Virus record (IMG/VR): IMGVR_UViG_3300047320_000285 | Span: 1 to 64,000 of that record | DNA length: 64,000 nucleotides | Reading direction: 5' to 3' (one strand) | Shown: positions 25,392 through 47,544 of the stretch, one piece after another | Layout: each line of letters opens with the position of its first letter | Numbering within the stretch: position 1 is the stretch's first letter | Notes under the pieces: generated by a model | What the model was told of the DNA's origin: nothing | The model's database searches: none | What the model saw: only the letters and a program-made list of their open reading frames with translations | Program-made: the position numbers and the translations under genes

Positions 25392-25398
25392 GGATACG

Positions 25399-30556: not shown

Positions 30557-30625
30557 TTTCTTCTAGCATCTTATGCTAGATCGTTCTTTTCCGCTCGATA
30601 TTCACTCACTTGCTGAGGCTCAAAC

Positions 30626-31153: not shown

Positions 31154-31185
31154 GTCGCCCTTTCTGCAGTAGTCCAATCCTGACC

Positions 31186-31214
31186 AAAGGGGGAGGCTTC
31201 GGCTTCCCCCTTTT
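31186..31214 (+). terminator. Intrinsic terminator
   Basis: aaagggggaggc-ttcg-gcttccccctttt. Confidence 0.8.
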
Positions 31215-31234
31215 ATATTTGCAGAGAGGTGAAT

Positions 31235-32035: not shown

Positions 32036-32043
32036 GACTCCCT

Positions 32044-32916: not shown

Positions 32917-32927
32917 CGGGAGGCAGT

Positions 32928-33761: not shown

Positions 33762-33769
33762 GGCCTGAC

Positions 33770-34729
33770 ATGCCACTTTATTCCAAGCAATCCCAGCAGC
33801 TTCTGGTGGACCTGATCAATGCGTCCAATCCGAGCCTGCCGGTCGCCCTGACGACGACCAACGCGAAGTACGGGACCCCAGCGGTGATTACGCCGCAGGC
33901 GGGGACGATTCAAAACACCTCAATCAGGGTCACAGCCTTGGCGAGCGGCCAGTACATTGGCAATACCACGCTGAATTACCGGCGACTGGACTTTGCCAGC
34001 CTGTTGCGCTCGGTACCGGTACGGATCGACAAGTTCTCGCCAGCCAACATCGGCGCCAGTCCGTTTAAGATCAGTGACCTGATCTCGGTGATCAACTCGA
34101 AATACGGGTTGAACCTGCAGGCTACCGACTACGTGGACGGCAGCATGGCGGCGGGTAACACTAACGCGGTGCCGGCTATCGGACTGGTCGCGGGTACGCG
34201 CAACAGCTCGATCACCGTCAACGCCGCGGCGGGTAGTTACGGTTATGTCGGTTCGTTCACGCTGTACTGGGTGCAAGCACCGCAAGACCTCGCGACGATG
34301 ATTACCACGCCGTCGCTGGAAACAGCACGGGTCTTCCCGGGCAATCGTAACGTGGTGGACAGTTCGATCTACGTGGTCGATCTGGATACCTACAGCCAAG
34401 ACTTCACCGACTACTTCGGGACGGGCGGTACGCTCAGCCCGACGACCTTCGCTAGTCAGACGATTAACACCGTGGGTAGCTGGCCGGCGTTTATCACCAT
34501 GCTCAACACGCTGTCGGGCAAGACGTACACGAACACCGGCAACGGCTCGCAGGCGATGGATCTGGTTGGTTCCACGACCAGTGCCCAGCTCGACATGACG
34601 CTGCCCGCTAACCAAGCACTGTTCCCGGAGGCCAACTTCAAGTATTACAACCGTCTGATGGTCGTGACGTTGTCGGCGAACGCGGCGGCTTGGGGCGCAG
34701 GTAAGCTGTTTATCCACTACAACGTTTGA
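33770..34729 (+). CDS. Tail-fibre family paralog, N+C modules (319 aa)
   Basis: QNTSIRVTA...YIGNTTLNYRRLDF; ends GKLFIHYNV. Confidence 0.8.
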   Translation: MPLYSKQSQQLLVDLINASNPSLPVALTTTNAKYGTPAVITPQAGTIQNTSIRVTALASGQYIGNTTLNYRRLDFASLLRSVPVRIDKFSPANIGASPFKISDLISVINSKYGLNLQATDYVDGSMAAGNTNAVPAIGLVAGTRNSSITVNAAAGSYGYVGSFTLYWVQAPQDLATMITTPSLETARVFPGNRNVVDSSIYVVDLDTYSQDFTDYFGTGGTLSPTTFASQTINTVGSWPAFITMLNTLSGKTYTNTGNGSQAMDLVGSTTSAQLDMTLPANQALFPEANFKYYNRLMVVTLSANAAAWGAGKLFIHYNV

Positions 34730-34738
34730 GGCTAAGCG

Positions 34739-35641
34739 ATGTCTTTTTTCCAATACGCATCACTGAACGATCTGGTTCGCGCGATCAATGCCGCGAACGG
34801 GACCTCGTTCTTGCTGACGGATTTGTCGTTCTCGAATCCGAAAGTCGTCGCTGGCACGTGGCAGGGTAATAATTCCGACCGCAACTCAGCGATCAAGGCA
34901 ACCGCGGCCGCCCCAGCTTTTCAGGGCTCGCAGGTTGTGCTGTATAACCGGCTTGATCTGGGCCAACTTATCGCGCTACCCGGTGCCCGGCTGAAGCTGC
35001 CGGGCACCGTCACCCACGTGTGGGACTGCTTGCCGATGCTCAAGTTTTACTTCGGCATCAGCTTCGTCCAAGGAGATCTGCAGAACACCGCGGTGACCGT
35101 GGGTGGCGATGGGACGGGCACGCTGAACATCACCGCCGATCCGAATTCGATCGGCTGGCAAGGTAGCGTGGCAATTCCGTTCACGGCCGGTGGTTCACCG
35201 ATCGATGTTGCGGTAGCAACCACGCAGCTGCCGGGTCTGAACTATCCGGTGGGTGATCCACCCTCGGTGCCGGGCACGTCGGTCTACGGTCCGGCTTATC
35301 TGTATCCGTACGACTTCACCACCTACACGCCGACCATCATCAACTACACGCCGGGTGTGCTCACCACTCCACAGGCGGACTTCTTGGTGGCGGCGTTGGC
35401 GGCGTTGGACATCGGTGCCGGTAAAGCACTCTGGAACGATACGACCTCGGGCGGCACGTTCACGACGTGGAACTTGACGGGTGCGACGATTGTCTCGAAC
35501 GGGTTGAATGACCCGATCAACAATCCGACCAATCCGGCCTACAAGTACGTGATGGTGCTCCAGTTGCGGGCGGATGTCACGATCCCGACTGGCTTGCTGT
35601 ATCTGCACTATAACGACCCGTTCGACCCGAACAACTTCTAA
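34739..35641 (+). CDS. Tail-fibre family paralog, N+C modules (300 aa)
   Basis: RNSAIKATA...FQGSQVVLYNRLDL; ends GLLYLHYND. Confidence 0.8.
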   Translation: MSFFQYASLNDLVRAINAANGTSFLLTDLSFSNPKVVAGTWQGNNSDRNSAIKATAAAPAFQGSQVVLYNRLDLGQLIALPGARLKLPGTVTHVWDCLPMLKFYFGISFVQGDLQNTAVTVGGDGTGTLNITADPNSIGWQGSVAIPFTAGGSPIDVAVATTQLPGLNYPVGDPPSVPGTSVYGPAYLYPYDFTTYTPTIINYTPGVLTTPQADFLVAALAALDIGAGKALWNDTTSGGTFTTWNLTGATIVSNGLNDPINNPTNPAYKYVMVLQLRADVTIPTGLLYLHYNDPFDPNNF

Positions 35642-35651
35642 CCCAAGTTGT

Positions 35652-35677
35652 CGAGCGGGGTTTTCGAATCCCGCTCG
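35652..35677 (+). terminator. Hairpin
   Basis: gagcggg-gttttcgaat-cccgctc, then gttct. Confidence 0.5.
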
Positions 35678-35695
35678 TTCTGAATGAGGTCACGT

Positions 35696-37174
35696 ATGCA
35701 AGTACCGTATAAACAAAGTCAAAGCCAGACTGACGTGTTCATGGCTTTGATCAATCAGTCCAATCCGGGCTTAAGCGTGCATCCGTTGCAGCTCACGGAT
35801 CTGCGCAGCCTCGCACCGACGGTGATTGCGTCACCGGTCGGTATTCAGGACACGAGTATTCGTTTGTTGGTGAAGCCTAGCAACGCGAATTACTACGGTT
35901 CACAAACCGTCACGTACCGTCGCATCAAGCTGTCGCAAGTCTACAAGGGTCTACCGACCAATGGCGGTGTACCCACCCTAGCGTTACTGCAGTATTCATC
36001 CAGTAGCCTGACGGTCGCCCAGATTATCGCTGAAGTGAACCAGCGTTTGGGTACCGCGTTTGTGCTGGCTGACATTGCCAATGCAGGACCGCTAGTGAGT
36101 GGCAGCACCATGACACTCGTGATGAACGCGACGTCGCTGTGTTATCAGGCCGAGGGCGCGGGCTCGATCAACGTCACGTGGACCCGCCCCAAGCAACCGC
36201 TGCAGGCCAGTCCGGGCGGAGCGATCACCACGATTCCGACGGTACTGAATGGCCGGAGTTACCCGGGCGGTAACACGTTTCCGCGTACCACGCCGCAAGG
36301 GGACTTCTTTACCTACGGGGCCGACTTCAGTCAAGTATCGACGCAGCTCAATGCGCTGGCGGCGACGGGCACGATCACCGCTGCGATGTTGCAAACGGGT
36401 GGCTCGTGGAATACCATCGTCGGTTTGATGCAGGCGCGCCGTCCGAGTCTGAACTTCAACGCCAGTGATGCAGGCTCAGTGTCAGGCGGTTTGCTCAACT
36501 GTACGTGGGCCCGCTTTACGATTCCGTCCGCGTCGGTACCCGGGGCGAACGCGGTCAAGTTCACCAGTGTGGTGGTGGTTCGCCCCCCTGTGTCGGGGAC
36601 ACCGTGGTTCCAAGGACAGATCTATCTGCACTACACGCCGGGTTCGGGTACGTCGACGGTCGAAGGGTTCTATCTGAACTCCAACGACGAACTGCAGCAG
36701 TTGATGATTGCGGCTGGCGCCACCAACATCGGGCAGAATACCGCCACCACCGGTTGGACGGTTACGGGGATCCGGGCGACCAAGACCGCGGATAATCAGC
36801 CGAACCAGAATACCAAGCTGCGGGTCACCCCGCAACCGGGCAACACGTTTTATTCCAGCTTTGCGGATCTGTTTTACAACCGCATGGACTTGCAGTTTCT
36901 GGCCAGCTTTAATCCGTACGTGTTGTCGATGGCGCCGGGCATTTCGGTATTGACGGTACTGAACACGATTCGTGATCAGTTTGGTATCCAGCTGACTACG
37001 GACGACATCAACGACGCGACCACGGTGGATAAGTTTGGGGATGGCTCTGCTACGTCTGTTACACTGGTGGCCAAGAGCACGTCGCTCAGCTGGTTCGGTA
37101 CCGTGACCCTGACGTTCGGTGGACTGCCGGATATTTCGACTGCGTTCGTCTCGCCGGTCCTGACTGGCTTCTAA
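35696..37174 (+). CDS. Tail-fibre family paralog, N+C+N modules (492 aa)
   Basis: Start at ATG 35696 after GAGG; internal GQIYLHYT followed by a second N-module ending ISTAFVSPVLTGF. Confidence 0.8.
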   Translation: MQVPYKQSQSQTDVFMALINQSNPGLSVHPLQLTDLRSLAPTVIASPVGIQDTSIRLLVKPSNANYYGSQTVTYRRIKLSQVYKGLPTNGGVPTLALLQYSSSSLTVAQIIAEVNQRLGTAFVLADIANAGPLVSGSTMTLVMNATSLCYQAEGAGSINVTWTRPKQPLQASPGGAITTIPTVLNGRSYPGGNTFPRTTPQGDFFTYGADFSQVSTQLNALAATGTITAAMLQTGGSWNTIVGLMQARRPSLNFNASDAGSVSGGLLNCTWARFTIPSASVPGANAVKFTSVVVVRPPVSGTPWFQGQIYLHYTPGSGTSTVEGFYLNSNDELQQLMIAAGATNIGQNTATTGWTVTGIRATKTADNQPNQNTKLRVTPQPGNTFYSSFADLFYNRMDLQFLASFNPYVLSMAPGISVLTVLNTIRDQFGIQLTTDDINDATTVDKFGDGSATSVTLVAKSTSLSWFGTVTLTFGGLPDISTAFVSPVLTGF

Positions 37175-37184
37175 TAAAGGACTT

Positions 37185-37610
37185 ATGATGAGTAAGATTT
37201 TTTGGCCGAACTATCTGTTCCATGCTGACTTCAGTGCGGATCAGGCCGAGCTGGCAGAGATCCCGCTGGGGGCAGTCAGTGCGGATACGGCGACCTTGCT
37301 GGCGGCGACGCTCTCGACCCATGACACCGGTGAAGGCCGGGCGTTGTGGACCGATCAAGCAGCTAACGCGTGGTCGCTCGAAGGGGTGGAAGTGACGTAC
37401 AACGGTCAGAACAGTTCGCTGTTCCCGACCAAGTATATCCACAACACCGTACTGGGGATTAAGTTCCCGGCGGATTCTGTCACGCCGCCTGCAGGTACGT
37501 TGCTGTATCTGCAGTACGACACGTCGGCTAACCCCCCGACCATTGCGGATCCGGCACCCGAGGAGCCTGCTCCCACGGAACCGACCGACGACTCAACCCC
37601 GCCGGCATAA
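37185..37610 (+). CDS. Tail-fibre family paralog, C-module only, with Pro/acidic tail (141 aa)
   Basis: GRALWTDQAANAWSLEGVEVTYNGQN...GTLLYLQYD resembles the C-module of the 34739 gene. Confidence 0.75.
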   Translation: MMSKIFWPNYLFHADFSADQAELAEIPLGAVSADTATLLAATLSTHDTGEGRALWTDQAANAWSLEGVEVTYNGQNSSLFPTKYIHNTVLGIKFPADSVTPPAGTLLYLQYDTSANPPTIADPAPEEPAPTEPTDDSTPPA

Positions 37611-37686
37611 GTCGATTCTGGGTCACCTTCTCACGAGGGTGACCTGGTATCATCTTTCCCGTGTTTGTTTTTCATTCGAGGTAATC

Positions 37687-40041
37687 ATGGCGATTCACGA
37701 CATGTGGACGTTTGACCACGCGCCGCAGGGTTCGACTGATGTGTCGACCGGTTCAGGTAGTCCGGTATATGCGACCAATACGGGGACGTATTTTCAGTAC
37801 ACGGGCAATCCCGGGTACGTGTATGCCAACGGGATTGCTGGCGCTGCGCAGCTGACCAGTGACGGCTATCTGACCATGAATTCGAGCAGTTCGGCCAACC
37901 CGGGGATGGCGATCAAGGCCAATGAAGTCCAAGACTGGAGCGTGGCCACGCAGTATTGGGTAGGGTTTCGCACCAAGACTTCCAAACAGAATGTCGCGAC
38001 CGCTAACCTCTTTGCGATGTCGGACACCATCGGGATGGCGAATCCGACGGCTATGGTCCAAGAATCGGACATGACCGCTGCCAGCGCCAATACGCTCAAT
38101 ACCGAATATCAGGTCGAAATCTTTATCGACCGAGTGAACCGGACCTTTCAGGTATGGGTGGCCGGGGTCAATGTAAGGAACGGGGTCATTGCAGCCGCCA
38201 GTATTGTGGCCAACGGCAATGGCTTCTATTGGTTTGGTCCGTGGAATAGTGGCACCGCGCCAGGCAGTGCAACGCGTGCGTTCCGGGACTTTTACTGGCT
38301 GGATGTCGATGGTGTCGATACGACCCGCTTGGGTTCGGTCCGCTCGTCGCTGGCGCCGCTGAGCGCGCTGAATGCACCGAACTACACGCTCAATGCTCCG
38401 AGCAACACCGCGCCGGTCTTAAGCGGCAGCGCGACCATTGCGGCGACCCAGACGAAGTTTGGTGCTAATGCCTTGAATAACGGCGCTGGCGGCGCCACTA
38501 ACGGTATCTCGATTCCGAGCATTCCTGCGCTGCAGTTCACCACGGACTTCACGATCGAAATGTGGGCGTATCCAACCACCAACTCGGTCAACATGATTTT
38601 GGCGGGTAAGGGTGCCAAGGCCTTGTTGTGGTATGCCTCGGGGCCGCGTTTGCAGCTGACAATCGATGGTGCCGGCGGTGCGCAGATCAATGCCGCACCC
38701 ACCATCGCGTTGAACACATGGCACCACATCGCGCTGACGCGCCAAGGTAATACGTGGAACATCTGGCTCGACGGGGTCTCGGTCGGTACGTACAGCGGCA
38801 CAGCTGCTGACAGTTGGGGTAACAATACTAACATCCTGTATCTGGCCAACGCACTCGATCAGTCTGGCTGGGGCGTGACTAATCCGGGCTTTGCAGGGTT
38901 CATCGACGAAGTCCGGATTAGTAACATCGCCCGTTATACGACCACTTTTACGCCCGCATCAGCCGCGTTCAGCCCGGACACCAATACGGTGGCGTTGTTG
39001 CATCTGGACTCGAACAGTGGTAGCAATCTAGTGGATTCGAGCGTCAGCGTGGCCACGCCGTTGGCGGCCTTGCAGGCGGCGTATCCGGTGCCGCCGGTAG
39101 TCACCCCGAATGTGATCAGTGCGGTTACCAATGATCCGCTCACCTCGAGCTTCGCCAGTGGCTTGGCCGCGAGCGCGAAGATCATCGCCGTTGATTATCG
39201 GGTCGCTGAGCAAGCATCAATCCCGGGCTCGCTGCTGAATCCCGTACTGAGTGATGGGACGAACAACGTCGCGCTGGCTCAGGTCTTCTCGCCGGTGAGT
39301 GCGATGCAATTCGGTCAACGGTTGGGCTTGCGGCGTGCTGCGCCGGACGGTGGCATTTGGACCCCAGCGAAAGTCTCGGCCGCGTCGTTGGCGTTGACGC
39401 CCGTCCAAGTCAAGACCTTGCTGTTGCTGCACTTCGATGGCACCAACGGCGCGACCACCACCACCGATGCTGCGGGTCTCAATGCGAGTTTGACGATGGC
39501 AGGCGGCAGCACCATCAATACGGCCCAGTCGAAGTTCGGTACCGCGGCGATGTTGAATGGCGGCTCAGCCAATGCTGGGGTCTCGATCCCCGATGGCCCG
39601 ACAGTGCGCTTCACGGCCGGTCTCAGTCTGACCATTGAATGCTGGTGCCGCTCGACCAATAACGGTCAGATCGGGGTACTGTTCGGTAAAGATGCGGGTT
39701 CGCCCTATTCGCACCTGACGTATAACGCCGGTCAGTGGCAGTTCTGGACGGGCGCGACCGGGTCGGCCTCGATCAGCGCGAACTCAGGCGTAGCCGTCAA
39801 TACGTGGATGCATATTGCGCTGGTGTTTAATGGCTCGACATTCTCGCTGTATCAGAACGGCGTGTTGTTGGGTTCAGCCGCAGGCGTGCAATTCGGCTCG
39901 GATAACACCTTGCCGTTTATGGTGGGTAACTACGGCGCGAATGCACCTTGGCAAGGTAATATCGATGAGTTCCGGATCAGTGCCTTGGCGCGCTACACGT
40001 CAGCCTTCACGCCCCCGACTCAGGCATTCGTGCTGGATTAA
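37687..40041 (+). CDS. Tail fibre / receptor-binding protein with two LamG (ConA-like lectin) domains (784 aa)
   Basis: Start at ATG 37687; repeats of TQxKFG...DFTIExW...WHHIA....G..W.I..DG...GFIDEVRIS..ARY...FTP. Confidence 0.85.
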   Translation: MAIHDMWTFDHAPQGSTDVSTGSGSPVYATNTGTYFQYTGNPGYVYANGIAGAAQLTSDGYLTMNSSSSANPGMAIKANEVQDWSVATQYWVGFRTKTSKQNVATANLFAMSDTIGMANPTAMVQESDMTAASANTLNTEYQVEIFIDRVNRTFQVWVAGVNVRNGVIAAASIVANGNGFYWFGPWNSGTAPGSATRAFRDFYWLDVDGVDTTRLGSVRSSLAPLSALNAPNYTLNAPSNTAPVLSGSATIAATQTKFGANALNNGAGGATNGISIPSIPALQFTTDFTIEMWAYPTTNSVNMILAGKGAKALLWYASGPRLQLTIDGAGGAQINAAPTIALNTWHHIALTRQGNTWNIWLDGVSVGTYSGTAADSWGNNTNILYLANALDQSGWGVTNPGFAGFIDEVRISNIARYTTTFTPASAAFSPDTNTVALLHLDSNSGSNLVDSSVSVATPLAALQAAYPVPPVVTPNVISAVTNDPLTSSFASGLAASAKIIAVDYRVAEQASIPGSLLNPVLSDGTNNVALAQVFSPVSAMQFGQRLGLRRAAPDGGIWTPAKVSAASLALTPVQVKTLLLLHFDGTNGATTTTDAAGLNASLTMAGGSTINTAQSKFGTAAMLNGGSANAGVSIPDGPTVRFTAGLSLTIECWCRSTNNGQIGVLFGKDAGSPYSHLTYNAGQWQFWTGATGSASISANSGVAVNTWMHIALVFNGSTFSLYQNGVLLGSAAGVQFGSDNTLPFMVGNYGANAPWQGNIDEFRISALARYTSAFTPPTQAFVLD

Positions 40042-40055
40042 TTAAAGGATGGATC

Positions 40056-42386
40056 ATGCCTATTCACGACATGTGGTCGTACGACGCGGCAGTGCAGGGG
40101 GCCACCGACGTGTCCACTGGTACCAGCCTCGCAGCGTATGTTGAAAACGGCCTGTATAACCAGTACAGCGGTTTGCCGGGCATGTTGTATAAGAACACCA
40201 GCGCTACGGCGGCGCTCGGCGTAGACGGCTTCCTGACGCTGACGGCGGCCGGTACGCTGAACGCCTGCTTGCTGGTGCAAGCCAAGGAGGTGCAGGACTG
40301 GTCGGTCGCTACGCAATACTGGCTGGGGTTCCGCACCAAGACCACCAGTCAGAACGTGGCCACTGCCCACGTGTTCAAGCTGGTTGACGTACCGGGCATG
40401 ACCAACGCGTCGGTGTTTCTGTTGGAGTCGGATTTGACGGCCGCAGGCGCTAACGTTTCCGGGACCGAGTATTACGTCGAGGTCTTTGTCGATCGCGTGA
40501 ATCTCGTCTATCAGGTCTGGGTCAATGGTATCCAGATCAAGAATGGCGCGATCAGCGCGGCCTCGGTGATCGCCAATGGCGGGAGCTACTACGTCTACGG
40601 CGCGACCGGCAGTCCGGCCAACCCGGTCAATGGTAATAACCGGTCGTTTCGGGATTACTATTTCGTCGATGTCGATGCAATCAAGACGCCGGGTCGACTT
40701 GGTTCGGTCCGGTCTTCGCCCCAGATCACTCCGCTCCCGAGTGCGCCGAACAACGGCTCGCTGTATCAGTCCACGATCTCCGCCACGCAGTCGAAGTTCG
40801 GTGGCTCGTCGCTGTCGGTGGGTGCTGCAGCCGCTTCGGTGGTGACGGTACCGGATAGCCCGGCGCTGCGCTTGGGGGTGACGGGAGACTGTACGGTCGA
40901 GTGCTGGGTCTATTACACGGGGGGTGGTACGACACCGGTGGTGTTCGGCAAACAGATCAACAACCTGCCGAACTACGCTCACCTCACGATGAGTAGCGGT
41001 AACTGGGTGTTCTATACGGACAGCGGCGCAGCCGTGATGACGGTAGCCTCCGGCGCGATCACCAATACGTGGGTGCATATCGCTGCGGTCAAACAAGGTA
41101 CGACGTGGACCCTGTATCAGAATGGGGTGGCGCTCGGCTCAGTGAACAATAACGGCACGTTCGGCAATAACAGCGCACCGTTCTTGATTGGTAACTGGGG
41201 TGGTCTCAACTCGCAATGGCTCGGGTTCATCGACGAGTTCCGTATCAGTAACATCGCCCGTTACACCGCAGCCTTTACACCGCCCACGCAGGTCTTTACA
41301 CCGGACGCAAACACACTTGCGCTGTGGCACATGGAGAGCAGTGTTCTGGGGCAGATTCTGGATTCGGTCCCAGCCTTTACACCAACCACTCTGCCCACCT
41401 CGCCCAATGCAGTAGGCTATAGCGCGCAGCTGCTGGGTTCGGCTGGTTTGTCGACTACGCAGGCCAAGTTCGGCACTAGCTCGTTTGTGACCAACGGCGT
41501 GGCGGGCTCGTGCGCGCAGATCCCGGACGCACCGCAGTTGCGCTTGATCAACGACTGGACGATCGAGTTCTTTACGTACAACCCGTCGCCGGCTACGGTA
41601 ATGATGTACCTGAATAAGGGCACCAACGCGTATTTGTTTAACAATGCTGGCACGCTCGGTCTGTCGCTCGATCCGGCGAACTCATTGGTGATCAACGTGG
41701 CGGGTCTTCTGAAAGCTAATCAGTGGCAGCATATCGCGGTCACCAAGCTCGGTCTGAATGTGCAGTTGTGGGTTGACGGAGTATTGGCGGGTTCACTGGT
41801 GGCGGCACTCCCCAACGGCACGTTCGGTAATGTGGCCAGCCCGTATCAGATCGGCATGTGGACCAACAACACCGACGAGATGGTGGGTTTCATGGATGAG
41901 TTGCGCATCAGTAACATCGCCCGTTACATCGCACCGTTCACCCCGCCGACTCAGCAGTTTGTGGTCGACGCCAATACACTGGTACTGATGCACTTTGAGT
42001 CGGTGTTCAATGGCATGCTGGCTGATGATGCCTGCAACGTTGCAGACTTGCTGCAAACGCCTTATCTGGCACCCCCCGGTGTGTTGCCAATGCTGGTAAC
42101 CTCGCCGACTAACGATCCGGTGACTGTGCCGTTGGGTGCACCGACCCCCGGTAAGTTGTTGGCCGTCGATTTCCGGCTGGGGATCAAAGCCAATAATGGG
42201 CCGGCCAGCATGTCGGGACAACTGAATCAAGGCAGCAACAATCAGGCTACCCCTACCCTACAATTGACCGATAACAGTCTGGGCTACGCGCGACGTCTCG
42301 CACTGACGACTGCGGCGCCGGATGGCGGGGCTTGGACACAGGCCAAGATTGGCACCACGTCTTTGGTGCTGACGCCTAATACCTAA
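40056..42386 (+). CDS. Tail fibre / receptor-binding protein with two tandem LamG domains (776 aa)
   Basis: N-terminus paralogous to the 37687 gene (MPIHDMWSYD / QDWSVATQYWLGFRTKT); two LamG repeats. Confidence 0.85.
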   Translation: MPIHDMWSYDAAVQGATDVSTGTSLAAYVENGLYNQYSGLPGMLYKNTSATAALGVDGFLTLTAAGTLNACLLVQAKEVQDWSVATQYWLGFRTKTTSQNVATAHVFKLVDVPGMTNASVFLLESDLTAAGANVSGTEYYVEVFVDRVNLVYQVWVNGIQIKNGAISAASVIANGGSYYVYGATGSPANPVNGNNRSFRDYYFVDVDAIKTPGRLGSVRSSPQITPLPSAPNNGSLYQSTISATQSKFGGSSLSVGAAAASVVTVPDSPALRLGVTGDCTVECWVYYTGGGTTPVVFGKQINNLPNYAHLTMSSGNWVFYTDSGAAVMTVASGAITNTWVHIAAVKQGTTWTLYQNGVALGSVNNNGTFGNNSAPFLIGNWGGLNSQWLGFIDEFRISNIARYTAAFTPPTQVFTPDANTLALWHMESSVLGQILDSVPAFTPTTLPTSPNAVGYSAQLLGSAGLSTTQAKFGTSSFVTNGVAGSCAQIPDAPQLRLINDWTIEFFTYNPSPATVMMYLNKGTNAYLFNNAGTLGLSLDPANSLVINVAGLLKANQWQHIAVTKLGLNVQLWVDGVLAGSLVAALPNGTFGNVASPYQIGMWTNNTDEMVGFMDELRISNIARYIAPFTPPTQQFVVDANTLVLMHFESVFNGMLADDACNVADLLQTPYLAPPGVLPMLVTSPTNDPVTVPLGAPTPGKLLAVDFRLGIKANNGPASMSGQLNQGSNNQATPTLQLTDNSLGYARRLALTTAAPDGGAWTQAKIGTTSLVLTPNT

Positions 42387-42397
42387 GTGAGTGAGCT

Positions 42398-43456
42398 ATG
42401 TCGAAAGCAAAAAACATGTATGCGTTTGACCATATCCCGGTCGGTTCTTCCGCCACCGGCGGGAATGTGCCAACGTATAGCGATTTCCCGTTTGCCTACT
42501 TTAACTCGACGGTCGCTGGCGCGTTAAGTGGTGGTACGGCGGTGGATGCAGGTGGGACGTGGTTGGTCTCCGGCGCCGCTGGCGCAGCCAGTAACTTCTA
42601 CGCGGGCTTCTGGTACTACCCGATGGCGCAGTTCGACCTGAGCAAAGCACGCAGCTGGATTGGTTTTCGTCTGAAGATGATGAGTGCGAATCGCGTCAAT
42701 CCGCCGCTCGCAGTCTGGACGGCGGCTTTCGCCACGCAACCAGCGAACTTGGTGTTGGGTAACGATTACCCATTCGTGACGGGTCAGGAGCACTATGTTG
42801 AGGTGTTGATCGACCGCGTCAATAAGACGCGTACGGTCTGGGTGGACAGTCAGCTGGCGGTGCCAGCCGTGTCGTATGGTTCGTACACGATCCTGAGCAC
42901 GGACCTGTTGAGTTTCGGTACTAACGGTCCGACTGGCGGCTCGACCGCGCAAGCCTACCAGATCAAGGATGTGTACACCGTTGACGATCCGAACGATGGC
43001 TCAGTGACGCGCATGGGGCCGATTATCGCCCGACCGATTACGGAGGCTTCAGCTACCGGAGCCGGTTGGAATGCGTCAACCGGCACGCCTTTGTCAGCAC
43101 TGAATACGCCGGTCAATACCACTACCCCGAGTACGCCGAACGTGGCGTTCGCAGGTGACGGCACGCCGCTGATCGCGACGCTGCAAACGACCGCCGATCC
43201 GGGTGCGGTAGTGCAAGGTGTGCTGTTGATCGGCTCGGGTCAACGTAATCAGGGTACGGGCACGGTGTTTCGTACGACCATCACAGATCAAGCCACCCCC
43301 ACGCCGAATCAACAACAGATCGCCACGTTGTTTCCGGCCGGGTCGTATCAGTACGGTAAGAGCTTGGCGTTCTTGCCCAATGCGTTGGATGGCAGTAACT
43401 GGAGTGCAGCCAAGATTGCGCAGCTGACACTGTCCAATGTAGCCAGCGCGACTTAA
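42398..43456 (+). CDS. Paralog of the 37687/40056 genes lacking LamG domains (352 aa)
   Basis: FDHxP, WIGFR, EHYVEVLIDRVN, KDVY.VD, RMG N-part joined directly to the TPLSALNTP...PDG..W..AKI C-part. Confidence 0.8.
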   Translation: MSKAKNMYAFDHIPVGSSATGGNVPTYSDFPFAYFNSTVAGALSGGTAVDAGGTWLVSGAAGAASNFYAGFWYYPMAQFDLSKARSWIGFRLKMMSANRVNPPLAVWTAAFATQPANLVLGNDYPFVTGQEHYVEVLIDRVNKTRTVWVDSQLAVPAVSYGSYTILSTDLLSFGTNGPTGGSTAQAYQIKDVYTVDDPNDGSVTRMGPIIARPITEASATGAGWNASTGTPLSALNTPVNTTTPSTPNVAFAGDGTPLIATLQTTADPGAVVQGVLLIGSGQRNQGTGTVFRTTITDQATPTPNQQQIATLFPAGSYQYGKSLAFLPNALDGSNWSAAKIAQLTLSNVASAT

Positions 43457-43470
43457 CAAGGGGTCGGTAG

Positions 43471-46353
43471 ATGTCTACAACTTTTCGCAAGACCGCCGCC
43501 GTCACATGGACGAAGGACCCGACTTCCGTTTCCTTGCGAAATGCGAAAGCGGTGGCCTTCGCCAGTGATGTCGGCGGTAACTTGCGTAACTTGCAGGGGT
43601 ATGCGTTCCAGAGTCCGCTACCCGGCGGGAATCTGCGCACTATCCGCGGTTACGCCTTTCAGTCAGTGAAACCGGCCTTGCCCCTCAATGTCACGGGGGA
43701 CTTGGCGCTGTACGCACTGATCAACACCAACAACATCGCACTGAGCCCGTGGTCGGCCAGTAACTCGACGCTGGGTGTACCGAGCGCGTTAGGTACACCG
43801 CTGGCGAGTGGTCAGAATACGCAGGTCAGTCTGACGGCCAAGCAGAGTTCGGGTTACAGTGGGGCGATGACGTTTCAGTACGCCCGTCGTAATCTCGCGG
43901 ATGCTTTTCCGACACCGGTGGCGATTACCGTACCGGGCAGTGCGACGACGATCTACGCGCAGCTGGCGATGATCAACACGAAGTACGCGATGAACCTGAC
44001 GCAGGCGGACGTGGTGGATGGTCCGATTGCAGCAGGTGCCGCCAGCGTAGTACTGACTGCCAAGTCGACCAGCTGGTTGTTTCTGCCGGGCACCACCGCA
44101 ATTGCTGGTAGCCCGCCGACACTGGCCTCAGTGCTCACGGAGCCGAACCTGCCGGGCTTTACCAATGTCGCTGGGGTGGGTCCGGGTTATCCGTACGCGC
44201 AGTCAGTCTTGCAGATGCACTTTGAAGGCTCTGGTGCTGCTCTGGCGGCCGATAGCTTCGGGCATCCGATGACGACTGTGGGTAACGTGGGGGTGAACTC
44301 GACTTTCACGTCCAAGTTTGGCACGGGCTGTAGTGGTTCAACCGGCGTGGGGATTTACTACACGACGGTGGATCGCGGTGATCTGCGTCTGGGCGCAGAC
44401 TTCACGATTGAGTTCTGGATGTATTGTTCCAACGTCACCACGGCCACCGGTACGTTGCTGGCGAAGGGTGCTTCGTTGACCCAAGCGTCGATGCAGTTGG
44501 TGAACGCCAACTTGGTGATCAACTCGGATCAAACTCCCGGTTTGATTAACGTCGCGCACGGCGTTGCCGCTAACACTTTCACGCATATTGCGTTAGTGAA
44601 GGCTGCGGGTGTATGGACGTTGTATGTGGGTGGAGTGGCAAAAGCAACGATTACCAAGACCGATACGTTTGGTGTGAACGCTTCGCCGTTGGTGATTGCC
44701 AACAGCTTCAATGGCGCAGCACCGCCACCGACGTTTATGGACGAACTGCGGATCAGCAATGGTATCGCTCGGTACACGGCTGCCTTCACGCCGTTGACCT
44801 ATGCATTCGGTGACGTATCGACGACGACCTTCGATGGTTTGCCGACGGGTAACGCCCAGTTATTGATGCACTTTGACGGGGCCGATACCAGCACGGTGTT
44901 CAAGGAAGAGAATGGTCGACCGGTGACGAACACGGGTGGTCAGTTGACGACGGCGTTGGCTCAGTTTGGTCCGAGTTCGCTGGCACCGTTGCCGGTCAGC
45001 AGCAACGTCGTGACCCTGCCGTCTGACCACAGTCTCCAGTTGTCGGATAACTGGACGATGGAAGCGTGGGTCAACAACCTCAGTGCAGGTCAGACAGGGG
45101 TGGTGTTCTCGAAGGATAACGGTGCGTCACCGTTCGCCCACCTGACGTATGCGGCGGGTTTCTGGCAGCTGTTCCTCGATGGCGCGGCGGTCGCGATGTC
45201 GGTGGCCGCCAGCACGGTGTTGAACACGTGGATCCATATCGCGGTGGTTAAGCGGCGCGGTACCGTGGCGATTTACCAGAACGGTGTCTCGCTGGGCTCA
45301 CTTGCCGCCGCCAGTACGTTTGGTAACAACAATTCGCCGTTCCAGATTGGTAACTGGGGTGGTCTGGCCAATCCGTTCCAAGGTTACATCGACGAGGTCC
45401 GCGTGAGCAAGGTGGCGCGTTACTTTGGTAACTTCACCCCGCCTACCGCACCGTTTGCATTGGGTGCGGCTGACCGGATGACGCTCACACAAGCCTTCCA
45501 GAATAACGGTATTTTCTGGGTTGCACCGACTAGCGCCACCACGATTCTGGCCCAGCTGGCGACATGGAACACGATGTCTGGTGTACCTTTGAGTGCGACC
45601 GATTTGGCGGATGGTCCGATTGCTGCCAATGCTTCCAGTGTTACGCTGACGGCAGCAGCCACCAGTACCAGTCTGGTGCCGGGTAGTCAGATTACCATCA
45701 CGGCCAAGAACACTGCGTTGCTCATGCATTTCGATGGTACCAGTGGTGCGCAGACGTGGACCGACGAACGCGGGCATGCAATGACGACGTCGGGTGGGAC
45801 AGTTGCCACGTTACAGCTTTCCAACGTGCAGGCGAAGTTTGGTGGTACGTCGTTCCTCAGTACGGGCGCAGGCGCAATCATCACCCCGTCAGCGCCGGAG
45901 CTTATGTTGGGGGTCACCACGGACTTCACCATTGAGTTCTTCTTTAACATGATCGGTGTCGTGGCTGGTCAGGTGATGTACGAGAAGGGCAACTCAGGCG
46001 CGCGGGTGCAGTACAACGCCGGTAAGCTGTATGTGTATTCCGACCAGTCAGCGAATACGGACGGGGGTCAGTTGCTGACCGTGGCAGCGAGCTTTATCAA
46101 GACGGCTCAATGGCAGCACATCGCCATCGTCAAGTTCAACGGTACGTGGACTGCGTATGTGGATGGGGTGGCGCAAGTCAGTGTCAGTGCACCGACGCAG
46201 ACCTTCGGCAATAACACCAACAACGTGATTATTGGTAACTACTTCAACGGTGCAAACCCGCAGAACGGTTACATGGACGAACTGCGGGTGAGTAACGTCG
46301 CACGTTATACGGCTGGCTTTACGCCGCCCACGGCGCCATTCGTGCTGGATTAA
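43471..46353 (+). CDS. Tail fibre / receptor-binding protein: family N-module + three LamG domains (960 aa)
   Basis: GQNTQVSLTA...GYSGAMTFQYARRNL module; three MHFxG...KFG...DELRxS..ARY..FTP repeats. Confidence 0.85.
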   Translation: MSTTFRKTAAVTWTKDPTSVSLRNAKAVAFASDVGGNLRNLQGYAFQSPLPGGNLRTIRGYAFQSVKPALPLNVTGDLALYALINTNNIALSPWSASNSTLGVPSALGTPLASGQNTQVSLTAKQSSGYSGAMTFQYARRNLADAFPTPVAITVPGSATTIYAQLAMINTKYAMNLTQADVVDGPIAAGAASVVLTAKSTSWLFLPGTTAIAGSPPTLASVLTEPNLPGFTNVAGVGPGYPYAQSVLQMHFEGSGAALAADSFGHPMTTVGNVGVNSTFTSKFGTGCSGSTGVGIYYTTVDRGDLRLGADFTIEFWMYCSNVTTATGTLLAKGASLTQASMQLVNANLVINSDQTPGLINVAHGVAANTFTHIALVKAAGVWTLYVGGVAKATITKTDTFGVNASPLVIANSFNGAAPPPTFMDELRISNGIARYTAAFTPLTYAFGDVSTTTFDGLPTGNAQLLMHFDGADTSTVFKEENGRPVTNTGGQLTTALAQFGPSSLAPLPVSSNVVTLPSDHSLQLSDNWTMEAWVNNLSAGQTGVVFSKDNGASPFAHLTYAAGFWQLFLDGAAVAMSVAASTVLNTWIHIAVVKRRGTVAIYQNGVSLGSLAAASTFGNNNSPFQIGNWGGLANPFQGYIDEVRVSKVARYFGNFTPPTAPFALGAADRMTLTQAFQNNGIFWVAPTSATTILAQLATWNTMSGVPLSATDLADGPIAANASSVTLTAAATSTSLVPGSQITITAKNTALLMHFDGTSGAQTWTDERGHAMTTSGGTVATLQLSNVQAKFGGTSFLSTGAGAIITPSAPELMLGVTTDFTIEFFFNMIGVVAGQVMYEKGNSGARVQYNAGKLYVYSDQSANTDGGQLLTVAASFIKTAQWQHIAIVKFNGTWTAYVDGVAQVSVSAPTQTFGNNTNNVIIGNYFNGANPQNGYMDELRVSNVARYTAGFTPPTAPFVLD

Positions 46354-46449: not shown

Positions 46450-46992
46450 ATGGCAAAAATCGATGCAAGCAAGTCCGCATTGGACAACTTGCTTGTTCTG
46501 GTGAATACGGCCAACACTGGCCAAACCATCACGAACGCGCAAGTGACCGCGGCAGCTGCGACGGTGAAAACCGATACCGGCGACGGTCGCAACACCTCCG
46601 TGGTGTTGTCGGCAGTGGGCGGCCAAGGTTATAGCGGTTCGCAGACGGTCAACTACACCCGGCGCGCGCTGAACGACAGTGTCACGTCGCCGAACTTCGC
46701 AGCCACACAAACCATCGGTGACACGGCCTCGGCAATCATCGCTGCGCTCGCCACCACCAACGGCCTCGTGGCGTCGGAACTTCACCTCGAAGATCCGGGC
46801 GCACCCGGTACGCCGGTCACGGGTGCGATCAACAACAGCCCCGCTACGTTGAACCTCGTGTCGGCCAACGGCTCGCTGTTGTACATCGACGGTTCGTCGC
46901 AAGCGATCACGTTCACGTGGAACGCACCGTCGGTGCCTCTGACGACGGCGATCGCCACGGTTGACCTCGCCGGCTTCGACGCGGCTTCCTAA
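46450..46992 (+). CDS. Tail-fibre family paralog, N-module only (180 aa)
   Basis: LLVLVNTAN...GRNTSVVL...GYSGSQTVNYTRRAL...PLTTAIATVDLAGF; highly biased codons. Confidence 0.8.
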   Translation: MAKIDASKSALDNLLVLVNTANTGQTITNAQVTAAAATVKTDTGDGRNTSVVLSAVGGQGYSGSQTVNYTRRALNDSVTSPNFAATQTIGDTASAIIAALATTNGLVASELHLEDPGAPGTPVTGAINNSPATLNLVSANGSLLYIDGSSQAITFTWNAPSVPLTTAIATVDLAGFDAAS

Positions 46993-47008
46993 GCGCGGTG
47001 GTAGGACA

Positions 47009-47042
47009 GAAGCAGGGGCCTTCGGGCTCCTGCTTTTTTATG
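47009..47042 (+). terminator. Intrinsic terminator ending in TTTTTATG
   Basis: agcaggggcc-ttcg-ggctcctgct-ttttttatg. Confidence 0.8.
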
Positions 47043-47076
47043 CCGAATGCTATGCCTTCCCCTCTTGTGAGTAATC

Positions 47077-47544
47077 ATGCCGAATATTCAAATCGATCCA
47101 AGCAAGTCTGGCTTGGAAAACCTGCTGGCTATGGTCGATGCGTTCAATACGAACGGCCCTGCCACGCCTGACGAAGTGAGCGTGAGTAACCTGCAGGCGA
47201 TCACGCCTAACGGGGTGCTTAACACCTCGGTCACCCTCACGGGTACTAACACCGGCGCTACTCACTATACGGGTAGTGTCACGGTCGAATACGGGCGACT
47301 GGTGCTGGCAGATGAAGCTACCAACCCGTCGACACCGGTGGAGATCCCCAACGGTACAACCGACCCGGTTGTCATCCTCGGCTTGGTCGCCACACATTAC
47401 GGGTTTGTGCTGGCGGACATTAGCTGGCAAGCTAACCCGACGGTACCCGGTGCGTTTCCGGCCGACACCAGCGAGACGGTCCAGTGTTCGGGTTCACTCG
47501 TGTATCAGGACGGCACGGCAAGCGTCAATCTGCACTGGGATTAA
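47077..47544 (+). CDS. Tail-fibre family paralog, N-module only (155 aa)
   Basis: LLAMVDAFN...LNTSVTL...YTGSVTVEYGRL; the start MPNIQIDPSKSGLENLL resembles the 46450 gene (KIDASKSALDNLL). Confidence 0.8.
   Translation: MPNIQIDPSKSGLENLLAMVDAFNTNGPATPDEVSVSNLQAITPNGVLNTSVTLTGTNTGATHYTGSVTVEYGRLVLADEATNPSTPVEIPNGTTDPVVILGLVATHYGFVLADISWQANPTVPGAFPADTSETVQCSGSLVYQDGTASVNLHWD

What the first reader, a model, noticed from the sequence alone, without database searches (positions are those of the whole stretch)
37687..46353. Plug-in LamG cassette system in four receptor-binding proteins, with circularly permuted lectin units
Seen: genes 37687, 40056 and 42398 share one N-part/C-part scaffold. Gene 42398 has it empty (RMGP...TGTPLSALNTP). 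Gene 37687 has one LamG inserted at that junction plus one appended at the C-terminus. Gene 40056 has two inserted in tandem. Gene 43471 puts three LamG units on the other (gp131-135-like) scaffold. The register differs: inserted units start at TQxKFG and end with FTP...D.NT.xLxHxxS, whereas appended units start with LLxHFDG and end at FTPPT..F.LD. The LLxH strand therefore moves from the N-end to the C-end, as in a circular permutation. Inference: a modular receptor-binding toolkit diversified by recombination between LamG repeats, displaying several glycan specificities at once.
Basis: partly seen in the sequence, partly recalled or inferred. Interest (0 to 1): 0.6.

Follow-up and report, generated by a model that had tools for sequence, protein, structure and literature searches.

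The report
Plug-in permuted LamG cassettes, jumbo phage
Four neighbouring virion genes of an uncultured 254-kb jumbo phage carry seven lectin-like LamG domains, either appended in the normal strand order or plugged into a fixed linker of a two-domain scaffold in a circularly permuted order; relatives differ in cassette number and kind, so this is a real but not unprecedented modular toolkit, probably for binding host surfaces.

Summary
Genes 37687, 40056 and 42398 share an N-part/C-part scaffold that no Pfam or PHROG family covers. They carry 1 inserted + 1 appended, 2 inserted, and 0 LamG units. Gene 43471 carries 3 units on a DUF7941 domain.

- **Register.** All 24 inserted units in the family lack the LLxHFDG head strand and carry a homologous strand after FTP..F..D.NT. 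All 27 appended units have the reverse arrangement.
- **Tail strand.** A fragment-complementation prediction places the tail strand antiparallel to the last strand of its own core (ipSAE 0.73; best control 0.01). The circular-permutation reading is therefore supported by prediction only.
- **Variation among relatives.** Architectures include N-C, N-I-C, N-C-A, N-I-C-A, N-I-I-C and N-C-A-A-A(-A). The insertion state changes about 13 times on the scaffold tree. Cassette and scaffold trees disagree, which means recombinational exchange.

Corrections:
- DUF7941 matches phiKZ gp127, a baseplate star-lobe protein, not gp131-135.
- The scaffold N-part is itself a ConA-like jelly roll.
- The permuted phase is widespread in metagenomic LamG arrays.
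- There is no sign of programmed variation: no reverse transcriptase, no inverted repeats, and DNA repeats only 60-80% identical.

Receptor and glycan binding remain inference. I rate this a new variant of a known kind.

The parts
37687..38358 (+). g37687 scaffold N-part (aa 1-224), a ConA-like jelly roll
   Evidence: 54% identical to the g40056 N-part in the MAFFT alignment (BLASTP). Family HMM match. The homologous part of P0003 aligns to ConA-like CBMs: 5mqs Z 14.4, 5hon Z 12.7.
38359..38397 (+). g37687 junction hairpin before the insertion point (aa 225-237)
   Evidence: Strands E225-229 and E234-236 in the AF2 model. Indel boundaries in sister pairs fall just after the equivalent segment.
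38398..39042 (+). g37687 inserted LamG cassette I1 (aa 238-452), permuted register: core first, beta1 tail last
   Evidence: Pfam Laminin_G_3 at 269-416. No head upstream, tail downstream. VIA alignments cover 259..449-453.
38977..39042 (+). Tail strand and loop of I1 (aa 431-452; DTNT-VALLH-LDSNSG...)
   Evidence: Beta strand E434-438 at pLDDT about 92. As a separate chain it docks on core 240-431 with ipSAE 0.73 against 0.01 for the best control. It pairs antiparallel with residues 406-413.
39043..39411 (+). g37687 scaffold C-part (aa 453-575), a small beta sandwich
   Evidence: Aligns to g40056 residues 655-775. C-part HMM match. No Pfam family; look-alikes are small phage proteins.
39412..40041 (+). 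g37687 appended LamG unit A1 (aa 576-784 plus stop), canonical register with head KTLLLLHFDG
   Evidence: Pfam. VIA alignment of model residues 574..779 to AbnA domain 4 (5ho2, 5hon), Z about 22 with 192-193 residues aligned, head strand included.
40056..40727 (+). g40056 scaffold N-part (aa 1-224)
40743..41366 (+). g40056 inserted cassette I1 (aa 230-437) with its own tail (TPDANT-LALWH-MESS...)
   Evidence: Its core is 47% identical to the appended unit of g37687.
41367..41420 (+). Pro/Thr-rich linker between the two inserted cassettes (aa 438-455)
   Evidence: Read directly from the sequence.
41421..42026 (+). g40056 inserted cassette I2 (aa 456-657) with its own tail (VVDANT-LVLMH-FES...)
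   Evidence: It groups with the inserted unit of L003_11097 (97/84) inside a fully supported clade that also holds P0014 and P0016 (100/99).
42027..42386 (+). g40056 scaffold C-part (aa 658-776 plus stop)
42398..43456 (+). g42398 empty scaffold: N-part aa 1-215, junction 216-230, C-part 231-352
   Evidence: AF2 pLDDT 92.9, pTM 0.91. N-part and C-part HMM matches. No Pfam or PHROG hit. The empty form is the commonest architecture in the family.
43471..44205 (+). g43471 N-terminal DUF7941 part (aa 1-245), phiKZ gp127-like
   Evidence: Pfam PF25613 at 72-233, E 5.2e-27. phiKZ gp127 matches the same family at E 1.2e-27; gp131-135 do not match.
44206..44808 (+). g43471 LamG unit U1 (aa 246-446), canonical register (head VLQMHFEG)
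44854..45462 (+). g43471 LamG unit U2 (aa 462-664), canonical register (head AQLLMHFDG)
45463..45714 (+). g43471 spacer module (aa 665-748), a repeat of part of the DUF7941 region (aa 155-208)
   Evidence: BLASTP 56% identity over 54 aa, E 2e-12. The same module separates appended LamG units in P0063, P0069 and P0102. DNA repeat D14.
45715..46353 (+). g43471 LamG unit U3 (aa 749-960 plus stop), canonical register (head ALLMHFDG)
   Evidence: Sister to an appended unit of the other scaffold, P0063_A2, with 100/100 support.
30017..37610 (+). Upstream array of DUF7941 paralogues (about ten genes): the context of the toolkit
   Evidence: Pfam and PHROG matches.
46450..47544 (+). Two further short DUF7941 paralogues downstream

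Best explanation
This is the variable outer-tail or baseplate module of an uncultured phiKZ-type jumbo phage from a rhizosphere metagenome. Its nearest cultured relative is Burkholderia phage FLC9.

Two carrier families display LamG_3 (ConA-fold) domains:
- A previously unannotated two-domain scaffold, made of a ConA-like N-domain and a small beta-sandwich C-domain.
- DUF7941, which is phiKZ gp127-like.

The LamG unit exists in two phases of the same repeat:
- Canonical phase: beta1, the HxDG loop, the core, then ...FTPPTxxF. This form is used when units are appended to a C-terminus, often behind a 70-90-aa spacer module.
- Permuted phase: the core, FTP..F, the linker D.NT, beta1, then the HxDS loop. 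This form is used when a unit sits inside the inter-domain linker of the scaffold. Here beta1 folds back onto the last strand of its own core.

Cutting the repeat in the loop between beta1 and beta2 gives a cassette whose two ends are adjacent in space, which suits insertion into a linker. This geometric rationale is inferred.

The permuted unit is what the permutation-by-duplication model predicts from tandem arrays. Both phases exist as whole arrays in metagenomes.

Over evolutionary time cassettes have been gained, lost and swapped between positions, paralogues and the two carriers by recombination. Related phages therefore display different numbers and kinds of LamG domains.

Shown here: the architecture, the coupling of register to position, variability among relatives, and the discordance between cassette and scaffold trees.

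Predicted only: that the tail strand fills the beta1 slot.

Inferred: that the proteins sit on the baseplate or fibres, and that the LamG domains bind host surface glycans and so shape adsorption and host range.
For: Architecture.

Register rule, 24/24 against 27/27. Head and tail consensus motifs are homologous.

Tail packs on its own core:
- ipSAE 0.73 against 0.01 for the best of three controls. This mark was reached by 51 of 78 solved complexes and 2 of 108 mismatched pairs.
- The three runs agree in at least 98% of contacts, and the partner's pLDDT is at least 67.
- Contacts 411:436, 409:438 and 412:434 show antiparallel pairing with the IDEVRIS strand.
- The tail strand has pLDDT about 92 in the full-length AF2 model, which has mean pLDDT 90.7.
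- VIA ranges of the inserted unit reach 449-453. The appended unit aligns from 574, head included, to AbnA domain 4 at Z about 22.

Plug-in behaviour:
- Clean 197-217-aa indels at one site between sister proteins.
- 13 changes of insertion state on the N-part tree, at least 8 of them forced by starred branches.
- Syntenic loci L003, L004, L005 and FLC9 carry different cassette complements.

Exchange:
- The LamG-core tree intermixes the I, A and D classes, with at least 4-5 switches forced.
- Mosaic identities: P0001 vs P0008, N-part 69% and insert 44%. P0001 vs P0005, N-part 52% and insert 71%. P0001 vs P0010, N-part 40% and insert 64%.
- A spacer-plus-LamG module is shared by both carriers.

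Virion and tail context:
- The DUF7941 array surrounds the genes.
- phiKZ gp127 is a baseplate star-lobe protein (PMC13250141).
- Fold relatives of the scaffold include an Achromobacter phage AchV4 'virion structural protein', TM 0.70. That phage's tail cluster encodes several MS-detected 35-37 kDa virion proteins (PMC7996906).
- Laminin G3 lectin domains associated with tail fibres and other virion components are already recorded for jumbo phages (PMC7824862).
Against: - No model coordinates were available, so strand pairing in the full-length model was not read directly.
- The complementation score comes from a predictor that may simply recall the canonical LamG fold.
- No binding, virion-location or expression data exist for these proteins.
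- Variation is not concentrated in loops. Column entropy is 2.05 in strands and 1.98 in loops, p = 0.48, so there is no simple signature of a hypervariable binding surface.
- The presence/absence pattern could be produced largely by repeated precise losses rather than gains. The trees are unrooted and the N-part tree used the quick method.
- DNA identity between units in this genome is 60-80%, so no exchange is recent here.
Confidence: 0.65

Rival explanations
1. The tail is only a vestige. The LLxH segment after inserted units would be the leftover first strand of a lost downstream LamG unit, or part of the scaffold linker. The inserted LamG would then be a beta1-less domain, completed by a scaffold strand or not at all. 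On this reading there is no true circular permutation.
For: In g40056 the tail of the first unit lies upstream of the second core and could in principle serve as its head. MAFFT placed the scaffold segment RLGSVRSS opposite the head position. Strand pairing was not read from coordinates.
Against: - The tail and its HxDS..G loop are conserved in 24 of 24 inserted units across scaffold lineages only about 40% identical.
- Counting the tail with the preceding core gives exactly one beta1 per core in every architecture. The canonical reading leaves the first core without one and an orphan at the end.
- An 18-aa Pro/Thr-rich linker separates the first tail from the second core in g40056.
- Predicted docking on the own core scores 0.73 against 0.01 for controls.
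- Whole metagenomic arrays start with a core and end with a beta1.
Confidence: 0.12
2. One ancient insertion, then vertical descent with differential loss. The architectures would reflect old paralogue duplication and deletions, not a toolkit that exchanges cassettes.
For: The insertion site is always the same. DNA identity between units is low. No reverse transcriptase, invertible repeats or population variants were seen. Unrooted trees cannot tell gain from loss.
Against: - The cassette tree is discordant with the scaffold tree. One cassette type (P0001, P0005, P0010; support 100/100) sits in three different scaffold lineages at 64-74% identity, while their N-parts are 40-52% identical.
- Appended, inserted and DUF7941-borne units are sisters with strong support: P0001_A with inserted units at 98/80, P0004_D3 with P0063_A2 at 100/100, and P0013_A with L003_8594_D at 100/86.
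Confidence: 0.15
3. The proteins are structural or adhesive decoration rather than receptor-binding proteins. They would build or brace the enlarged baseplate periphery, or bind environmental polymers such as root mucilage or biofilm matrix, without determining host range.
For: The phiKZ counterpart of DUF7941, gp127, is a structural star-lobe component. The propeller domain of gp131, not gp127, is the proposed host-binding part (PMC13250141). No ligand-site conservation was shown. The sample is a rhizosphere metagenome.
Against: - LamG_3 and ConA-like domains at the free ends of tail proteins are typical carbohydrate binders. The best structural match is the arabinan-binding AbnA domain 4, and a CBA120 tailspike domain also matches.
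- Rapid turnover of number and kind between close relatives is the pattern usually seen for host-interaction modules. This last point is inference.
Confidence: 0.25

Closest known systems
Laminin_G_3 (PF13385) carbohydrate-binding modules, e.g. domain 4 of Geobacillus arabinanase AbnA (PDB 5HON, 5HO2)
   Same: All seven units pass the Pfam gathering score. The appended unit superposes on AbnA domain 4 over its whole length, N-terminal strand included: Z about 22, rmsd 2.4-2.6 A, 192-193 residues.
   Different: Sequence identity is only 21%. The phage units carry a conserved ARYTxxFTPPTxxF extension. Half of them, the inserted ones, have the first strand moved to the C-terminal end. Ligand binding was not tested.
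Natural circular permutations in the ConA-like fold (concanavalin A versus other legume lectins; permuted GH16 lichenases) and the permutation-by-duplication model. This comparison is from my own knowledge and was not tested here.
   Same: It is the same superfamily. One terminal strand is relocated to the other end of the chain. Tandem arrays that could generate the permutation are present, in both phases.
   Different: ConA is permuted post-translationally by transpeptidation; here the permutation is genomic. The new points are the strict coupling of phase to position (inserted versus appended) and the coexistence of both phases in one protein, g37687.
phiKZ gp127 (Pfam DUF7941), baseplate outer-periphery 'star lobe' protein
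   Same: The g43471 N-terminus and about twelve neighbouring paralogues match DUF7941. phiKZ gp127 matches the same family at E 1.2e-27.
   Different: phiKZ has one clear copy and no LamG fusion. Here the family is expanded to a dozen genes, and one copy carries three LamG units.
Burkholderia phage FLC9 (LC667451) gp311-gp316, gp323 and neighbours: the closest cultured relative
   Same: It has the same syntenic module. A DUF7941 array is followed by N-I-C (gp316), N-C-A (gp315), N-C-A-A-A (gp314) and three empty N-C genes (gp313-311), with DUF7941-LamG fusions as well.
   Different: All these genes are annotated 'hypothetical protein'. The cassette complement and order differ from the window. 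FLC9 has no tandem-insert gene and no 1+1 gene like g37687.
Modular receptor-binding proteins of phages with exchangeable distal domains, e.g. CBA120 tailspikes and branched fibres of jumbo phage phiKp24
   Same: Multiple paralogous tail proteins sit in one cluster. Binding-type domains are exchanged between carriers. A domain of CBA120 TSP2 superposes on the inserted unit: 5w6p, Z 17.8.
   Different: Exchange here includes insertion into an internal linker, not only C-terminal swapping. The exchanged unit is a small non-enzymatic lectin-like domain. The trimeric fibre or spike architecture was not examined.
Metagenomic LamG_3 array proteins of 650-1100 aa that start MVGASF...RSKKGIT and end ...NDANTLLLLHMDGTDASTVF.DDNG
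   Same: Their units are 30-40% identical to the inserted cassette, in the same permuted phase. 57 of 116 are arranged core-beta1 repeated, starting with a core and ending with a beta1.
   Different: They have no N-C scaffold. The arrays are free-standing behind a 20-30-aa N-terminal peptide. Their origin and function are unknown.

Membership tests
Pfam Laminin_G_3 (PF13385) / ConA-like lectin fold | HMM match above the gathering score | tested here: met
   Seven stretches of 48-84 bits against a cut-off of 27.6.
Pfam Laminin_G_3 (PF13385) / ConA-like lectin fold | Beta-jelly-roll fold superposable on solved LamG or CBM structures | tested here: met
   AF2 model with mean pLDDT 90.7. VIA Z about 22 (5ho2, 5hon) for the appended unit and Z 19.5 (4dqa) for the inserted unit.
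Pfam Laminin_G_3 (PF13385) / ConA-like lectin fold | Carbohydrate or Ca2+ binding site and actual glycan binding | not testable with these tools
   No ligand-site mapping was possible without coordinates, and there is no assay. Column entropy showed no loop-specific hypervariability.
Circularly permuted domain | The same set of sequence segments in rotated order: the N-terminal segment of one form is homologous to the C-terminal segment of the other | tested here: met
   Head consensus kT.LLlHFDG.ng.Tt.TD and tail consensus NTvlLmHFDSs.gG.v.Dss. Alignment. 24/24 against 27/27.
Circularly permuted domain | The relocated strand occupies the same slot in the fold | tested here: inconclusive
   The tail is predicted to pair antiparallel with the last core strand, ipSAE 0.73 against 0.01 for controls, and VIA ranges reach 449-453. 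No coordinates were read, and there was no matching test for the head of the appended unit.
phiKZ gp131-135 paralogue family (fibre base N-domain) | Sequence relationship of the g43471 N-terminus to gp131-135 | tested here: not met
   gp131-135 give no PF25613 match at E <= 0.01. The window's DUF7941 HMM hits gp127 (57 bits) and gp143 (16 bits) only.
Pfam DUF7941 (PF25613), phiKZ gp127-like | HMM match above the gathering score | tested here: met
   g43471 at 72-233, 95 bits. Neighbouring paralogues at 60-174 bits. phiKZ gp127 at 97.5 bits.
Phage receptor-binding protein | Located on the distal tail or baseplate of the virion | not testable with these tools
   Context only: the genes are embedded in the DUF7941 array, and fold relatives are annotated as virion proteins.
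Phage receptor-binding protein | Binds a host surface receptor and determines adsorption | not testable with these tools
   No host is known and no assay is available.
Programmed diversification systems (DGR, invertible shufflon) | Reverse transcriptase with template repeat, or invertase with inverted repeats flanking cassettes | tested here: not met
   No RVT_1 match in the genome. Only short inverted repeats, 71-89% complementary. All genes lie on one strand.

The most novel reading that the evidence does not exclude
The permuted LamG unit (core first, beta1 last) would be a self-contained natural plug-in module. Because the repeat is cut in the beta1-beta2 loop, its two ends touch, so it can be dropped into surface linkers of unrelated carrier proteins without disturbing them. 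Phages would exploit the two phases of one repeat systematically: canonical for end-on display and permuted for internal display. Whole arrays, single units and both phases coexist, which would make this a living record of permutation-by-duplication and a ready-made design rule for engineering multivalent phage binding proteins.
Probability: 0.3. Interest if true: 0.65.

Novelty: new variant of a known kind. Interest (0 to 1): 0.5.

Why it matters
If the prediction holds, this locus and its relatives, including the cultured phage FLC9, would show three things.

- **Protein evolution.** They give a clean natural example of how a circular permutation arises from tandem repeats and is then used for domain insertion. 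The rule is simple and testable: inserted units are permuted, appended units are canonical.
- **Annotation.** They define an unannotated scaffold family of virion proteins, 109 representatives among 1.84 billion, together with the boundaries of a 200-215-aa cassette that nature has moved between carriers many times.
- **Engineering and host range.** The cassette boundaries could guide engineering of multivalent binding proteins, and could help explain host-range differences among FLC9-like jumbo phages.

It is not a new biological principle. Lectin-like domains on jumbo-phage tails, modular exchange of binding domains, and permutation in the ConA fold are all known.

Tried and rejected
- **Megablast** of the 8.7-kb region against 50,697 phage records gave no match. 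tblastn of the empty scaffold found only FLC9.
- **Family and structure searches of P0003.** Pfam and PHROGs gave nothing. The PDB sequence search gave nothing meaningful.
- **Model coordinates** are not exposed in the Python box. Strand pairing in the AF2 model therefore could not be read, and I used fragment complementation and alignment ranges instead.
- **'gp131-135-like' label.** Tested and rejected.
- **Synteny with phiKZ.** tblastn of 25 window ORFs against two phiKZ stretches found only a kinase-like match.
- **DGR or shufflon.** No reverse transcriptase and no significant inverted repeats.
- **Recent recombination within the genome.** DNA repeats are only 60-80% identical.
- **Population variants.** The only run found is the probable source sample, held as contigs. 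One 44-kb contig matches with 0 differences, and there are no joints. This is not independent, and contigs cannot show rare variants.
- **Loop hypervariability.** No difference between strands and loops.
- **Target-site duplication.** I considered a target-site-like duplication flanking the insert (PLSALNAPNY versus PLAALQAAY). I dropped it because the two segments correspond to two different elements that are also present in empty scaffolds.
- **First regex tallies** of head and tail undercounted. The exceptions were read by eye and are all regex misses.
- **Not run.** The cap on complex prediction prevented the reciprocal control (head of A1 against its core). I also did not fold g40056 with its two tandem inserts.
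Full report
**Where the window lies.** The window is the first 64 kb of a 253,740-bp IMG/VR virus record with direct terminal repeats. Its GC content is about 58%. It encodes a phiKZ-type split RNA polymerase beta subunit, internal head proteins and several virion structural proteins. The only public run holding the stretch is a rhizosphere metagenome, probably the source sample. One 44-kb contig there matches with no differences. The nearest cultured relative is Burkholderia phage FLC9.

**Check of the observation.** The four ORFs translate without stops.
- Pfam finds Laminin_G_3 twice in g37687, twice in g40056, never in g42398 and three times in g43471. The N-terminus of g43471 matches DUF7941.
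- These seven units are the only LamG_3 matches in the genome.
- g37687 and g40056 share residues 1-225 at 54% identity in the MAFFT alignment. They also share a C-part of about 120 aa, which lies at 450-575 in one and 655-775 in the other.
- g42398 has both parts side by side, at 27-28% identity for the N-part and weakly for the C-part. Family HMMs confirm both parts.
- Aligning the seven units with their flanks shows the claimed register difference. Appended units begin with a LLxHFDG strand and end at FTPPTxxFxLD. Inserted units begin just before TQxKFG, lack that strand, and carry D.NT-x-LxH-x-(D/E)S after FTP..F.

**Is the register rule more than chance?**
- A profile of the three N-parts, run against 1.84 billion representatives, found only 109 proteins.
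- With the word-based search this gave 123 family members, with these architectures:
  - N-C: 69, plus about 18 more whose C-part has diverged
  - N-I-C: about 16
  - N-C-A: 9
  - N-I-C-A: 3
  - N-I-I-C: g40056, and later P0180
  - One each of N-I-C-A-A, N-C-A-A-A and N-C-A-A-A-A
- In every one of 24 inserted units the tail is present and a head of its own is absent. In every one of 27 appended units the head is present and the tail absent.
- The head and tail consensus motifs are clearly homologous.

**Does the tail strand belong to the LamG fold?**
- An AF2 model of g37687, built on a 78-row alignment, has mean pLDDT 90.7 and pTM 0.76. The tail forms a strand at 434-438 with pLDDT about 92. 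The head of the appended unit forms a strand at 577-581.
- First test, structural alignment. The appended unit aligns over 574-779 to AbnA domain 4 (Z about 22), so its head is included. The inserted unit aligns over 259 to 449-453 to 4dqa, the PAPP-A LamG domain and PTX3, so the alignment reaches past its tail.
- Second test, fragment complementation. I split the cassette into core (240-431) and tail (432-462) and asked for a complex.
  - The score was 0.73, against 0.01 for the best of three controls. That mark was reached by 51 of 78 solved complexes and 2 of 108 mismatched pairs.
  - The runs agree in at least 98% of contacts, and the partner's pLDDT is at least 67.
  - The closest pairs (411:436, 409:438, 412:434, 408:439-440) describe antiparallel pairing of the tail with the last core strand, IDEVRIS.
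  - The predictor may be recalling the canonical fold. That still shows the tail is beta1-like and that the core has an open beta1 slot.
- A counting argument agrees. Assigning each tail to the preceding core gives exactly one beta1 per core in every architecture, including the tandem g40056. There an 18-aa Pro/Thr-rich linker separates the first tail from the second core.
- I therefore regard the circular permutation as supported by prediction, not shown.

**The scaffold.**
- The AF2 model of the empty g42398 has pLDDT 92.9 and pTM 0.91.
- Its residues 1-212 are a ConA-like jelly roll. The best matches are sialidase BT_1020 CBM 5mqs (Z 14.4), Cip1 (Z 13.9) and AbnA domain 4 (Z 12.7). The carrier is therefore itself lectin-like. 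This explains the weak LamG-HMM hits inside N-parts.
- The C-part is a small beta sandwich with no Pfam family. Its look-alikes are small phage proteins.
- Fold relatives of the whole scaffold occur in many phages, at TM 0.6-0.7 and about 14% identity. One is an Achromobacter phage AchV4 'virion structural protein'.
- The AchV4 tail cluster encodes several MS-detected 35-37 kDa virion proteins (PMC7996906). I could not map the UniProt entry to a gene number.

**Plug-in behaviour and exchange.**
- Sister proteins that differ in state show clean indels of 197-217 aa at one site. The site lies between a short hairpin after the N-domain and a helix that opens the C-part.
- On a tree of N-parts, made with the quick method, the insertion state changes 13 times, and starred branches force at least 8 of these.
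- Syntenic loci carry different complements:

| Genome | Order of genes in the module |
|---|---|
| Window | [N-I-C-A] [N-I-I-C] [N-C] [D-L-L-L] |
| L003, L004 | [N-I-C] [N-C] [D-L] [N-C] [N-I-C] [N-I-C] [D-L] |
| L005 | [N-C] [N-I-C] [N-C] [D-L] |
| FLC9 | [N-I-C] [N-C-A] [N-C-A-A-A] [N-C] x3, plus DUF7941-LamG fusions |

- A careful tree of 51 LamG cores intermixes inserted, appended and DUF7941-borne units, with at least 4-5 switches forced. For example, the appended unit of g37687 groups with inserted units (98/80). U3 of g43471 groups with an appended unit of the other scaffold (100/100).
- Module identities are mosaic:

| Pair | N-part identity | Insert identity |
|---|---|---|
| P0001 vs P0008 | 69% | 44% |
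| P0001 vs P0005 | 52% | 71% |
| P0001 vs P0010 | 40% | 64% |

- A 70-90-aa spacer derived from part of DUF7941 travels with appended LamG units on both carriers.
- These results show recombinational exchange over evolutionary time.
- Nothing points to programmed or recent variation. There is no reverse transcriptase and no meaningful inverted repeats. Units within the genome are 60-80% identical in DNA. The only available contig set shows no variants.

- DUF7941 is not gp131-135-like. phiKZ gp131-135 give no PF25613 match, whereas gp127 matches at E 1.2e-27. gp127 is a component of the baseplate outer-periphery star lobe (PMC13250141). That paper proposes the propeller domain of gp131 as the host-binding part.
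- The permuted phase is not peculiar to insertion. Of the 116 LamG-array proteins most similar to the inserted cassette, 57 are built entirely as core-beta1 repeats, starting with a core and ending with a beta1. Another 13 are canonical, and in the rest the beta1 was not detected reliably.
- The inserted cassette therefore looks like one period of such an array. This is what the permutation-by-duplication model predicts (my own knowledge, not tested here).
- A plausible reason for the coupling of phase to position is geometric. Cutting in the beta1-beta2 loop gives ends that touch, which suits insertion into a linker. This is inference.

**Function.** LamG_3 and ConA-like domains on jumbo-phage tail and virion proteins are already on record (PMC7824862). 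The gene neighbourhood, the fold matches to carbohydrate-binding modules and a tailspike domain, and the rapid turnover between relatives make host-surface glycan binding the most likely role. No ligand, virion location or host is shown. Column entropy gives no loop-specific hypervariability. A structural or matrix-adhesion role cannot be excluded.

**Verdict.** The feature is real and well delimited, and the structural interpretation is largely right. It combines known ingredients: a lectin-like domain, modular exchange, and permutation in the ConA fold. The new parts are an unannotated carrier family and a strict phase-position rule. I rate it a new variant of a known kind, of moderate interest. 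The single read-laying run used 5,770 letters.

Noticed in passing
window 30017-37610 and 46450-47544: About twelve tandem paralogues of DUF7941 (phiKZ gp127-like) flank the LamG genes, compared with one clear copy in phiKZ. This suggests a much elaborated baseplate periphery. The same expansion is present in FLC9 and in loci L003-L005.
   Followed up: partly
window 35684-37174: This 496-aa gene contains two DUF7941 stretches. It also has a short Pfam PP-binding match at residues 420-451 (25.8 bits against a cut-off of 20.8), which is probably spurious.
   Followed up: no
window 45463-45714 (g43471 aa 665-748) and 43933-44094 (aa 155-208): A sub-domain of DUF7941 is repeated as the spacer before the third LamG unit. 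The same spacer separates appended LamG units on the other scaffold in P0063, P0069, P0102 and P0006. Spacer plus LamG is therefore a higher-order cassette shared by both carriers.
   Followed up: yes
window 42398-43042 (and the N-parts of g37687 and g40056): The scaffold N-part is itself a ConA-like jelly roll, Z 12.7-14.4 to CBMs and to AbnA domain 4. Even the 'empty' scaffold is lectin-like.
   Followed up: yes
proteins P0161-P0204 and others (metagenomic): This is a large family of 650-1100-aa proteins made of three to five LamG units in the permuted phase. They begin with a conserved 20-30-aa peptide (MVGASF...RSKKGIT) and end with an orphan-looking beta1 plus loop. Whether the last strand closes onto its own core or onto the first core is unknown.
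   Followed up: partly
protein P0015: A close N-I-C homologue sits on a 245-kb contig filed at NCBI as a Sulfuriferula sp. MAG. This is probably a jumbo-phage genome binned with its host, and it hints at betaproteobacterial hosts for this phage group.
   Followed up: no
protein P0011: The inserted LamG cassette of this relative carries a further insertion of about 35 aa, rich in aromatic residues, inside the core. This is a nested insertion.
   Followed up: no
window 37543-37686: The longest ORF of the first gene starts at a TTG 48 codons upstream. All homologues start at the MAIHD methionine, so 37687 is the likely start.
   Followed up: yes
window 3927-5279: There is a split multisubunit RNA polymerase beta-subunit gene of the phiKZ type (phrog_2962, E 3e-131). 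This marks the genome as a phiKZ-like, possibly nucleus-forming, jumbo phage. Yet tblastn of 25 other window ORFs (18.1-61.0 kb; this gene was not among them) against two phiKZ stretches, one of which holds RNAP beta-subunit genes gp178 and gp180, gave only a kinase-like match.
   Followed up: partly
locus L008 (FLC9 LC667451), 22511-25741 and 26477-28623: FLC9 has further LamG-bearing genes on other, unidentified N-terminal carriers: one of 1076 aa and two of about 355 aa. L005 has a similar 371-aa gene. The cassette therefore uses more than two carriers.
   Followed up: no
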